A DNA stretch of 64,000 nucleotides, taken from Saccostrea echinata. Taxonomy: Eukaryota. Of this stretch, positions 28,380-29,948 are shown in pieces (position 1 is the stretch's first letter; each line of letters opens with the position of its first letter). The position numbers were made by a program, and so were the translations under genes. Below the pieces are notes generated by a model. It searched no databases. It worked only from the letters and a program-made list of their open reading frames with translations, and had not been told where the DNA came from. Location of the stretch: NCBI RefSeq assembly GCF_033153115.1, contig NW_026889805.1, positions 17,236,001-17,300,000 of the forward strand, in the 5' to 3' direction.

Positions 28380-29948
28380 TCAATTTCCGGTGAAGTTAAT
28401 GTTGTGTACTCTTTGAAACTTTCTGGAAATCCACATCCTGATATTTTCAACAAGGGTTTGATTTTCGTTAGATCTTTCTTTCTTTTTTGTGCAGTAGTAC
28501 ATTTTGAAACAGATTATCAGAATAAAAACAGAACATCCTAAGACCACTCCTATCAACCCGTAAATAATGTTATTTATATCCATCGGTTTAGTCTTGTTGA
28601 CAGCTTCATTTTGTTGTCTTGTATTTGTTGCTGCAGAAAAGGTGGTTGTAGTTGTAATAGACGTAGACAGTTCTGTGGTGTTGGTAGGAGTGGCAAATGT
28701 GGTGGTAGGAGTGGTGGTTTTAGTAGTAGTGGTAGTTGTAGTGGTAGTGGTGGTCGTTGTAGGAGTGGTGGTGGTGGTGGTAGGAATGGTGGTAGTGGGA
28801 GTTGTTGTGGTTGTTGTGGTGGTTGTCGGGATGTCGGTCACAGTCACAGTCAGACTCACATCGTTCTCTTTTTTCACGTTATTGGCCTTTAGCGTCCATT
28901 TTCCATCGTCCACAACATCCAGAGACTTTATTGTAAGGACACCGGTTTCAGACACGACATAATTTGTTTCATTGTAGTTATAATATTTCAGTGCTGTTCC
29001 ATCCGGTCTTGTAAAGATGATATCTGGAAAAGGATCCCCTCCAAATGTGCATGAAATCTCCAGCTGAGTGTGATATTTACCGGTAAACGAAGATGATGTA
29101 CAGCTAACAGATGCAGGTACACATATTAACTGTGAAGATGGAGCATTCACAATTGAATAATACTGCAAAGACTTTGGTGAGGTACATACTACAGATTCTG
29201 GCATCGGACTTGGAAGTACTTTTACCCATTCTAAAGCTCAACTGCAATGCCATTCATTACTGTCTAAACGCAGAGTTTTAAGTTTAGGCAATGGTAACAT
29301 GCTTGAATTTGATAGTTCGGTGAACAAATTCCCAGATATATCTATGTACGCTAGGTTATTACTGGTCGTGGTAAAACTCCAATCTATGCGTTTGATATTG
29401 TTTCCGTGAAGATCTAAAGTCTTCAACATACCTAAAGGATTAAGCAGGCGTTTATCCAGCTTTGTCAAACCCATTTCTGCGAGGTATAGTTCTGTCAGAT
29501 GGGTCAAATCCTTGAAAGCCGAGAGAGCTATTTCAGTTCCGTTATTTCCAGACAAATGCAATGTTTTAAGCAATCTCAATCCTTTAAATGTGTTTTCCGA
29601 AATTTCACCAAGTTTATCGGAGGAAAGGTCCAGTGTAATCAATGATGACGGTAAAGAGCCATCTGCAATGGATTCCACATTGCTAAAAGCAATATAAAGC
29701 CTTTCCAAATTCAGTAAAGACGAAAACGAAGCACGTTCAATAGATGGTAAATTGTTTTTAGAGGTAAAAGTACCGCTTAGGTGTAAATTGTTAATTTCTG
29801 CTGGTAGAGCAGACGGGAATCTGCTTATTACTGGACGGCAGATAGCAGAAATATTGGAACACTGGCATTGAGACGGGCAAAAAGATTCAACACATACACA
29901 TTTCACAAAAAATATACAAAAAATGGCCGTAATAATTTTACTTTCCAT
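28380..29948 (-). pseudogene. LRR-Ig-Thr-stalk-TM receptor (522 codons if read through) with one in-frame TGA at 29238-29240; nonsense allele, truncated secreted form, or recoded
   Basis: Signal peptide, LRRNT (CPSQCQC..C), ~7 LRRs, LRRCT NEWHCS*ALEWV...VCTSP...C, Ig-like domain, Thr-rich stalk, TM (IIYGLIGVVLGCSVFILIICF) and short tail. ORFs 29238-29948 and 28380-29204 are in the same frame and collinear with the paralog at 58155-59753. Confidence 0.85.

What the first reader, a model, noticed from the sequence alone, without database searches (positions are those of the whole stretch)
29238..29240. In-frame UGA exactly at the conserved LRRCT cysteine of an otherwise intact receptor
Seen: TGG CAT TGC AGT TGA GCT TTA GAA TGG = WHCS*ALEW, aligning with WHCNCEMNAL in the paralog; the frame stays open for 285 more codons through Ig, stalk, TM and tail. 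Options: (a) a recent TGY>TGA nonsense allele giving a secreted 236-aa LRR-only protein, a possible soluble decoy or sensor from an intronless CDS; (b) UGA recoding as Sec/Cys or readthrough giving soluble and membrane forms; (c) a base-call error. UGA opposite Cys is the classic selenoprotein signature, but I found no canonical SECIS downstream and the UGA-G context is not a leaky one, so (a) or (c) is more likely.
Basis: partly seen in the sequence, partly recalled or inferred. Interest (0 to 1): 0.75.

Follow-up and report, generated by a model that had tools for sequence, protein, structure and literature searches.

The report
Recent stop codon in oyster receptor
One base change has put a stop codon where a structural cysteine belongs in one copy of a duplicated oyster cell-surface receptor gene, so this copy is most likely a young broken gene or null allele, not a selenoprotein.

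Summary
On the minus strand a TGA at 29240..29238 splits a 521-codon frame into 236 codons (signal peptide, LRR domain) and 285 open codons (Ig, Thr-rich stalk, membrane span, tail).

The genome is an oyster's. A paralogue 37 kb away, just outside the window (L002), has an intact 537-aa frame. It shares a 1170-bp ungapped block of 96.5% identity with this gene, and the flanks do not align, which is the signature of gene conversion. At the stop, L002 reads TGT. All 11 of 11 homologues with a residue in that column have Cys.

A custom SECIS scan found strong elements in 4 of 6 control selenoprotein genes of this genome. Downstream of the stop it found only one background-grade site. There is no leaky stop context and no unusual RNA structure.

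The best reading is a recent TGT>TGA nonsense change in a formerly functional, gene-converted duplicate. That makes it a young pseudogene or a segregating null allele.

The base call itself stays unchecked: the one public run that holds parts of the locus does not cover the site.

This is ordinary and of low interest. The scan's earlier notes held nothing on this site.

The parts
29238..29240 (-). In-frame TGA (codon 237) in place of the second Cys of the LRR C-terminal cap CxC motif. The paralogue L002 has TGT here.
29241..29948 (-). Upstream ORF of 236 codons: hydrophobic leader, CPSQCQC N-cap motif and leucine-rich repeats, ending ...NEWHCS.
   Evidence: LRR_8 E=3.7e-36
28380..29237 (-). 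Same frame downstream of the TGA: 285 open codons plus the terminal stop at 28382..28380. It holds the rest of the cap, an I-set Ig domain, a Thr-rich stalk, a hydrophobic span and a short basic tail.
   Evidence: (I-set 25.3 bits against a cut-off of 23.7)
28711..29880 (-). 1170-bp ungapped block, 96.5% identical (41 mismatches) to paralogue L002 (G000:C56, 37 kb away on the + strand, outside the window). The flanks are at random-level identity. This is a gene-conversion (or partial-copy) tract.
28960..29237 (-). 278 bp immediately 3' of the stop with no difference from L002. It may be a younger conversion tract (P=0.0005 for all sites, 0.0086 without the stalk, 0.12 for third positions only).
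29238..29303 (-). Patch of raised divergence from L002 that ends at the stop: 7 differences in 66 bp, including the window-derived replacements at codons 217, 219 and 223.
58128..59753 (+). More distant intact paralogue in the window (541-aa ORF, 33% identical in the LRR part) with ...WHCNCEMNAL...
25990..26065 (-). The only SECIS-like pattern hit downstream of the stop (ATGA at 26052). It is weak: helix II 7 of 8 pairs, helix I 5 of 7, -9.9 kcal/mol. It lies 2.3 kb past the ORF end and beyond two AATAAA hexamers. Judged to be chance.

Best explanation
The TGA is a real, recent T>A change (TGT to TGA) in one member of a pair of oyster LRR-Ig-stalk-transmembrane receptor genes. It ends translation after 236 residues, inside the C-terminal cap of the LRR domain, so this copy no longer makes the membrane receptor. 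It is either a young pseudogene or a null allele still segregating in the population. The rest of the frame looks intact for two reasons: the lesion is young, and the central 1.17 kb has been homogenised by gene conversion with the intact paralogue 37 kb away. Shown here: the stop, the TGT in the paralogue, Cys in all homologues, the conversion block, and the lack of a good SECIS. Inferred: that the base call is right, that translation really ends there, and that the truncated product is not functional.
For: (1): in the whole 923-Mb assembly only one other locus is closely related (L002, 91% protein identity); its frame is open and reads ...NEWHCSCALEW...
(2): there is an ungapped 1170-bp block at 96.5% identity. 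Codon 237 is TGA here and TGT there, a one-base difference.
(3): Cys is present in 11 of 11 homologues at that column, including named Crassostrea proteins.
(4): outside the block, identity is 66% (5' CDS), 51% (3' CDS) and 43-47% (flanks). Yet the unconverted 5' and 3' coding parts are still open, with a leader, a membrane span and the shared RVHNI motif; the tail has no other relative in the genome. So the copy was a working gene for a long time and the lesion is late.
(5): with the outgroups, four replacements are derived in the window copy (N111D at the conserved LRR Asn, 217M, 219P, I223L) against one clear one in L002 (K359R). This fits some loss of constraint.
(6): at a neutral divergence of 1-2%, the chance that 285 codons acquire no new stop is 0.72-0.52, so the open frame needs no special explanation.
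(7): strong SECIS elements were found in 4 of 6 control selenoprotein genes of this genome and none in the target.
(8): the local RNA fold has z=0.37.
Against: The base at 29238 was not confirmed by any read. The X1 contigs cover 28608-28767, 29389-29541 and 29609-29804 only, and X2 gave nothing. No near-identical protein or contig was found elsewhere.

Pairwise dN/dS against L002 is low downstream of the stop (0.076; 4 synonymous and 1 non-synonymous difference in 139 codons). None of the downstream replacements is derived in the window copy. Continued selection on a recoded frame would give the same pattern.

The frame is also open through about 110 unconverted codons.

My SECIS scan missed 2 of 6 control genes, so it is not fully sensitive.

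If X1 is RNA (a guess by the tool), its exact 160-nt contig on the window-specific stalk would mean the locus is transcribed.
Confidence: 0.78

Rival explanations
1. Base-call or assembly error: the true codon is TGT, as in the paralogue, and the receptor is intact.
For: The site is the only difference from L002 in the 301 bp between the neighbouring differences at 29261 and 28959. It lies at the edge of a 278-bp stretch identical to L002. No independent read or contig covers it.
Against: The assembly is highly contiguous (923 Mb in 425 contigs; no N in the window). The change is a transversion outside any homopolymer. By inference from general knowledge of modern long-read assemblies, a substitution error at one given base is much rarer than a real nonsense variant in a young duplicate of a highly polymorphic bivalve. 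This was not measured here.
Confidence: 0.08
2. The stop is real and the 236-aa secreted LRR-only product is kept for a function, for example as a soluble binder or decoy. The downstream frame would then be a leftover.
For: The upstream ORF keeps its leader, N-cap and repeats. The coding sequence has no intron, since L002's single ORF matches 537-aa P0002 over 100% of its length. By general knowledge, an exon-junction-dependent decay signal downstream of the stop is therefore not expected. The window copy's LRR part carries several derived replacements.
Against: The product ends two residues after the first cap cysteine. It lacks the other three cap cysteines, which are nearly invariant in the family, and is left with an unpaired Cys. 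One derived replacement removes the conserved LRR Asn. No homologue of this truncated form was found (3 proteins at E<=1e-20 among 954 candidates, none above 67% identity).
Confidence: 0.08
3. The UGA is recoded. It could be read as selenocysteine, read through at low level, or edited (A-to-I giving UGG). The locus would then yield a full-length receptor as well as the short form.
For: The UGA is opposite an invariant Cys. There are 285 open codons downstream, with low dN/dS against the paralogue. The oyster has Sec machinery and genes with an in-frame TGA and a good SECIS. PMC8557442 (passages read) describes bivalve retroelements that turned conserved Cys into Sec.
Against: No SECIS comparable to those of 4 of 6 control genes was found in the 3.7 kb downstream. 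The single hit is of background quality, given 9 sites in 128 kb of window sequence. It also lies beyond two AATAAA hexamers.

No homologue shows anything but Cys, and the 96.5%-identical paralogue uses TGT. The residue is a structural cap cysteine, not a redox site (motif position; its role is recalled from solved LRR caps).

The context UGA-G is not the leaky UGA-C/CUAG type (sequence; rule recalled). There is no stable local structure (z=0.37). Editing would give Trp, not Cys.
Confidence: 0.04

Closest known systems
Animal LRR-Ig transmembrane proteins (LRFN/SALM, LINGO-1, LRRC4/NGL, LRRC24-like, LRIG1)
   Same: They share the order of parts: leader, Cys-rich N-cap, leucine-rich repeats, a CxC...C...C cap, one Ig domain, a membrane span and a short tail. 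The solved LRFN1/LRFN5 ectodomains align over residues 24-371 of the intact paralogue and LINGO-1 over 64-358. Sources name the oyster relatives 'LRRC24-like', 'LRRC4-like' and 'LRFN5-like'.
   Different: There is a long Thr-rich, mucin-like stalk between the Ig domain and the membrane, and no fibronectin domain. Identity to the solved proteins is low, so no orthology is claimed. The window copy is cut by a stop inside the cap.
Pseudogene/functional-gene pairs homogenised by gene conversion (general phenomenon; examples recalled, not searched)
   Same: A disabled copy lies tens of kb from an intact paralogue. A sharply bounded, nearly identical central block sits between diverged flanks, so the broken copy looks 'otherwise intact'.
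   Different: The direction and dates of the conversion events were not resolved here. The third-position-only test for the youngest tract is not significant (P=0.12).
Cys-to-Sec conversions in bivalves (Naiad retroelement selenoproteins, PMC8557442)
   Same: An in-frame UGA is aligned with a conserved Cys in a bivalve genome.
   Different: According to the passages read, those elements carry top-grade SECIS elements 1-21 bp past the true stop. Here no comparable SECIS exists, and only one copy in one genome has the UGA.

Membership tests
LRR-Ig transmembrane receptor (LRFN/LINGO/LRRC4-like architecture) | Leucine-rich repeat domain | tested here: met
   LRR_8 at E=3.7e-36 (123 bits, cut-off 27) in the 236-aa piece.
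LRR-Ig transmembrane receptor (LRFN/LINGO/LRRC4-like architecture) | Complete C-terminal cap with four cysteines (CxC...C...C) | tested here: not met
   Window copy: the second Cys codon is TGA. In L002 the motif is complete and aligns to NPWDCGC of IGFALS. However, Pfam LRRCT_2 reaches only 14.7 bits against a cut-off of 23.8.
LRR-Ig transmembrane receptor (LRFN/LINGO/LRRC4-like architecture) | Immunoglobulin domain after the cap | tested here: met
   I-set at E=1.6e-05, 25.3 bits against a cut-off of 23.7, in the downstream piece, i.e. beyond the stop.
LRR-Ig transmembrane receptor (LRFN/LINGO/LRRC4-like architecture) | Single membrane span and cytoplasmic tail | tested here: inconclusive
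   A hydrophobic run IIYGLIGVVLGCSVFILIICF followed by KKKE is visible in the translation. No membrane-span predictor was available.
Eukaryotic selenoprotein gene | In-frame UGA aligned with Cys (or Sec) in homologues | tested here: met
   Cys in 11 of 11 homologues at the column.
Eukaryotic selenoprotein gene | SECIS element in the 3'UTR | tested here: not met
   the custom AUGA..AA..GA scan finds strong elements in 4 of 6 control genes (2 GPx, 2 deiodinase) and only a weak, background-grade site at 26052 in the target. Rfam found none, but it also missed the control elements, so that result says nothing.
Eukaryotic selenoprotein gene | UGA conserved in orthologues, or Sec forms present in other species | tested here: not met
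   the closest paralogue has TGT, and every database relative is a full-length protein with Cys.
Programmed stop-codon readthrough | Leaky stop context or a stimulating downstream structure | tested here: not met
   The context is UGA GCU. The 200-nt local fold has z=0.37, and 125 of 200 shuffles fold at least as well. Which contexts count as leaky is recalled knowledge.
Young pseudogene or null allele | Disabling change relative to an intact ancestral state | tested here: met
   TGT/Cys in the paralogue and in all outgroups, TGA here.
Young pseudogene or null allele | Relaxed constraint on the copy's own branch | tested here: inconclusive
   four clear derived replacements upstream but none downstream; pairwise dN/dS is 0.19 upstream and 0.076 downstream, from few events. 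No outgroup DNA was available for a branch test.
Young pseudogene or null allele | Frequency of the TGA in the population (fixed or segregating) | not testable with these tools
   no run covers the site. The single calls allowed for the look-up of sequencing runs and read laying are used.

The most novel reading that the evidence does not exclude
The UGA is fixed and decoded part of the time, either as Sec forming a selenylsulfide in the LRR cap or by readthrough. One intronless oyster gene would then make both a secreted LRR fragment and a full-length membrane receptor. It would be a case of a newly born selenoprotein at a structural disulfide.
Probability: 0.03. Interest if true: 0.8.

Novelty: already known. 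Interest (0 to 1): 0.15.

Why it matters
It matters little in itself: this is one more young broken or null copy in an expanded oyster receptor family. It has two practical lessons. First, a UGA opposite a conserved Cys is not enough to call a selenoprotein. About 8% of stop-making single-base changes in this frame fall in Cys codons, and gene conversion from an intact neighbour can keep a broken copy looking 'otherwise intact'. Second, Rfam's SECIS model did not report textbook-looking SECIS elements of this genome's own GPx genes. Its silence should therefore not be used as evidence against Sec in bivalves.

Tried and rejected
**Reads.** The look-up of sequencing runs gave two coded runs. 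Read laying laid 6 records of X1 and 0 of X2.
- Three X1 records are exact or near-exact pieces (28608-28767 and 29389-29541 with 0 differences; 29609-29804 with 5).
- The other three are 33-35-nt matches of longer contigs to the Thr repeat.
- No record covers 29196-29259, so the base call stays unchecked.

**Independent sequence.**
- The exact look-up found 0 of 4 ORF sequences in the protein collection.
- The search with the 236-aa piece gave 3 hits among 954 candidates, the best at 67% identity.
- The search with the L002 protein gave 33 hits among 8000 scored candidates, the best at 74%.
- The metagenome scan with a 22-mer next to the site gave 0 matches.
- This species is therefore not represented in these collections.

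**Rfam.**
- No SECIS was reported in 25500-30500 (the 2 matches are unrelated).
- The whole-genome RF00031 search gave 0 matches, with only 129 of 20344 candidates scored and a control that rang nowhere.
- Rfam also reported no SECIS in four GPx loci, nor in the 301 nt that hold a textbook-like element.
- I therefore rejected Rfam as a test here.

**Other checks.**
- PF10262 (Rdx) as a further control family gave 0 matches.
- A tiny intron that removes the stop is rejected: the only GT..AG around it spans 12 nt (sequence).
- A false duplication (uncollapsed haplotype) for L002 is rejected, because the flanks are at random-level identity.
- A younger conversion tract right after the stop is suggestive only (P=0.12 on third positions).
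- The paper search on nonsense polymorphism in oysters (listing only) gave nothing usable. I cite no paper for genetic load in oysters, and what I say about it is recalled.
- Supplements were not opened. The SECIS figures of PMC8557442 are in supplements and do not bear on my claim.
- The earlier notes of the scan concern the Ig domain and a P450, not this site, and I did not use them.

Full report
**What is there.** Read on the minus strand, the window carries ...AAT GAA TGG CAT TGC AGT TGA GCT TTA GAA TGG..., with the TGA at 29240..29238. The mechanical ORF list gives a 236-aa ORF 29948..29238 that ends ...NEWHCS. The same frame continues without a stop for 285 codons, to the stop at 28382..28380. 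Pfam places leucine-rich repeats in the first piece (LRR_8, E=3.7e-36) and an I-set Ig domain in the second (25.3 bits, cut-off 23.7). After the Ig domain come a Thr-rich stalk, a hydrophobic span and a short basic tail (translation). The more distant paralogue in the window (58128..59753, +) reads ...WHCNCEMNAL... and both pieces align to it colinearly.

**Whose genome.** The best database relatives of the family are oyster proteins, at 60-74% identity: Crassostrea virginica LOC111125415, C. gigas 'LRRC24-like' and Saccostrea 'LRRC4-like' (33 proteins at E<=1e-10 among 8000 scored candidates). So the window comes from an oyster of another genus. The assembly has 923 Mb in 425 contigs, and the window is G000:C56:17236001-17300000.

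**The key comparison.** A six-frame search of the whole assembly with the 236-aa piece gave 72 matches. Only two are close: the locus itself, and a locus 37 kb away on the other strand, just outside the window (L002, 91% identity). The next best match is 33% identical.
- L002 has one open frame. From its ATG this gives a 537-aa protein that reads ...NEWHCSCALEWVKVLPSPMPESVVC....
- At the DNA level the two genes share a single ungapped 1170-bp block of 96.5% identity (41 mismatches), spanning window 29880..28711.
- Outside the block, identity falls to 66% (68 nt of 5' coding sequence), 51% (331 nt of 3' coding sequence) and 43-47% (500-bp flanks), which is the level of unrelated sequence.
- Such a sharply bounded, nearly identical core between old, diverged ends is the signature of gene conversion, or a partial copy, between two old paralogues. 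It also rules out L002 being an uncollapsed haplotype of the same locus.
- Codon 237 is TGA in the window and TGT in L002, so one T>A change accounts for the stop.

**Conservation of the residue.** I aligned L002, nine database relatives and the in-window paralogue. All 11 of the 11 sequences with a residue at that column have Cys.
- The motif NxWxCxC follows the last repeat. In the search against solved structures it aligns with NPWDCGC of the IGFALS C-terminal cap.
- LRFN1/LRFN5 ectodomains align over residues 24-371 and LINGO-1 over 64-358.
- Pfam's own cap model stays under its cut-off (LRRCT_2, 14.7 against 23.8 bits). The cap assignment therefore rests on motif position and these alignments.
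- That the second cap cysteine forms a structural disulfide with the fourth is recalled from solved LRR caps. It was not measured here.

**How old is the lesion?** Within the block there are 12 synonymous and 8 non-synonymous differences upstream of the stop (codons 24-236). The 278 bp right after it (29237..28960) have no difference at all. Then 4 synonymous and 1 non-synonymous differences follow up to the end of the Ig domain.
- Nei-Gojobori estimates are dN/dS=0.19 upstream and 0.076 downstream. A Fisher test of the two parts gives P=0.62, so they do not differ.
- With the protein outgroups, four replacements are clearly derived in the window copy: N111D at the conserved LRR Asn (6 of 6 outgroups have N), 217M, 219P, and I223L (9 of 9 have I). 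One is clearly derived in L002 (K359R, 9 of 9 have K). Codons 79, 82, 188 and 230 are ambiguous.
- The window copy has thus gathered more replacements in its LRR part, and three of them cluster in a 66-bp patch (7 differences) that ends at the stop.
- The identical 278-bp run is unlikely under evenly spread differences: P=0.0005 for all sites and 0.0086 without the stalk. On third positions alone it is not significant (P=0.12). It may mark a younger conversion tract that begins next to the stop, but this is not proven.
- The unconverted coding ends are old, yet they still encode a leader, a membrane span and the RVHNI tail motif shared with L002 and its Crassostrea orthologues. The tail has no other relative in the genome; L002's tail matches at 31% identity with E=0.011.
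- Hence the copy was a working gene for most of its history and the stop is late.
- An open frame of 285 codons needs no special cause. Only 3.8% of single-base changes there make a stop, so at 1-2% neutral divergence the chance of no new stop is 0.72-0.52.

**Recoding.**
- Rfam reported no SECIS in 25500-30500. It also reported none in four loci of this genome's own TGA-containing GPx genes, nor in the 301 nt around a textbook-like element. The whole-genome search with RF00031 scored only 129 of 20344 candidates, and its control rang nowhere. I therefore discount Rfam here.
- I wrote a pattern scan instead. It looks for [AG]UGA, a helix of 8-14 pairs, an unpaired AA or CC, GA on the return strand and a lower helix, and then checks the fold energy.
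- As controls I took genes of this genome with one in-frame TGA inside a Pfam match: three GPx (3 of 10 matches carry the TGA) and three deiodinases (3 of 4).
- The scan found strong elements in 4 of these 6 controls. They have helix II of 9/9, 9/9, 9/9 and 10/12 pairs and energies of -10.8 to -20.3 kcal/mol. All have the form AUGA...AAAG...GA and lie 0.2-0.8 kb into the fetched downstream stretches.
- In the 3.7 kb downstream of the target's TGA it found one weak site, at window 26052 (7/8 and 5/7 pairs, -9.9 kcal/mol). An earlier, slightly stricter version of the scan gave 9 such sites in the 128 kb of both window strands, so this one is of background grade.
- The weak site also lies 2.3 kb past the ORF end and beyond the minus-strand AATAAA hexamers at 27478 and 26326.
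- The stop context is UGA-G. The 200 nt around the stop fold no better than shuffles (z=0.37). This speaks against a readthrough stimulator or an editing duplex. Editing would in any case give Trp, not Cys.
- Passages of PMC8557442 state that the Pacific oyster selenoproteome has 32 genes (citing Baclaocos et al. 2019, which I did not read). They also state that a Cys-to-Sec switch needs a SECIS gained at nearly the same time.
- A stop opposite Cys is only a mild coincidence: 15 of the 189 other stop-making single-base changes in this frame lie in Cys codons.

**What could not be settled.** The base call was not confirmed.
- The single run search returned two coded runs.
- X1's contigs match the locus exactly at 28608-28767, which includes window-specific stalk outside the conversion block, and at 29389-29541. 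At 29609-29804 they match with 5 differences, one of which (29705) is the L002 state. None covers 29238. X2 gave nothing.
- X1 is only guessed to be RNA, so it shows neither expression nor silence.
- No near-identical protein or contig exists in the other collections.
- I therefore keep about 8% for an assembly error. The contiguous assembly and the non-homopolymer transversion argue against it, by inference only.

**Verdict.** This is a real but ordinary feature: a recent TGT>TGA nonsense change in one of two gene-converted LRR-Ig receptor paralogues of an oyster. It gives a young pseudogene or a segregating null allele (0.78). The rivals are a retained secreted LRR fragment (0.08), a base-call error (0.08) and recoding (0.04). 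In fairness, the low downstream dN/dS, the absence of window-derived replacements after the stop, and the 4-of-6 sensitivity of my SECIS scan all leave room for the recoding reading.

Noticed in passing
L002 (G000:C56:17301266-17304976), ORF 1501-3114 +: This is the intact paralogue just outside the window. Its membrane span and tail (…TRKKKPPMPEKKPKQDLFDTVRNLTPRRTRRVHNIGNYEEYD) are nearly the same as in 537-aa P0002 and Crassostrea virginica LOC111125415. This is the conserved member of the family; the window copy is the divergent one.
   Followed up: partly
L021:770, L022 (minus) 461, L025 (minus) 250, L026 (minus) 233: Textbook-looking SECIS elements (AUGA...AAAG...GA, helix II 9/9 to 10/12) lie downstream of this genome's TGA-containing GPx and deiodinase genes. 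Rfam SECIS_1 did not report the GPx ones, even in a 301-nt search.
   Followed up: partly
window 19255-21189 +: A single 644-aa ORF (listed from GTG) carries all NOG1 domains: NOG1_N at 1.6e-56, plus NOG1 and NOGCT. It is an intronless nucleolar GTPase gene, possibly a retrocopy or simply an intron-poor gene.
   Followed up: no
window 42675-43259 +: A 194-aa ORF matches the middle of the cytochrome P450 profile (positions 112-254 of 462, E=9.7e-13). It is one exon of a P450 gene.
   Followed up: no
window 29609-29804: An X1 contig differs from the window at 29700, 29705, 29735 and 29765. Only 29705 is the L002 state. It is a third, mosaic haplotype of this block, consistent with continuing exchange between the paralogues or with high polymorphism.
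   Followed up: no
G000:C23:5008015-5025591: Three deiodinase-like matches lie within 18 kb on the minus strand. Two carry an in-frame TGA and have closely similar SECIS sequences, so they are a tandem duplication of a selenoprotein gene.
   Followed up: no
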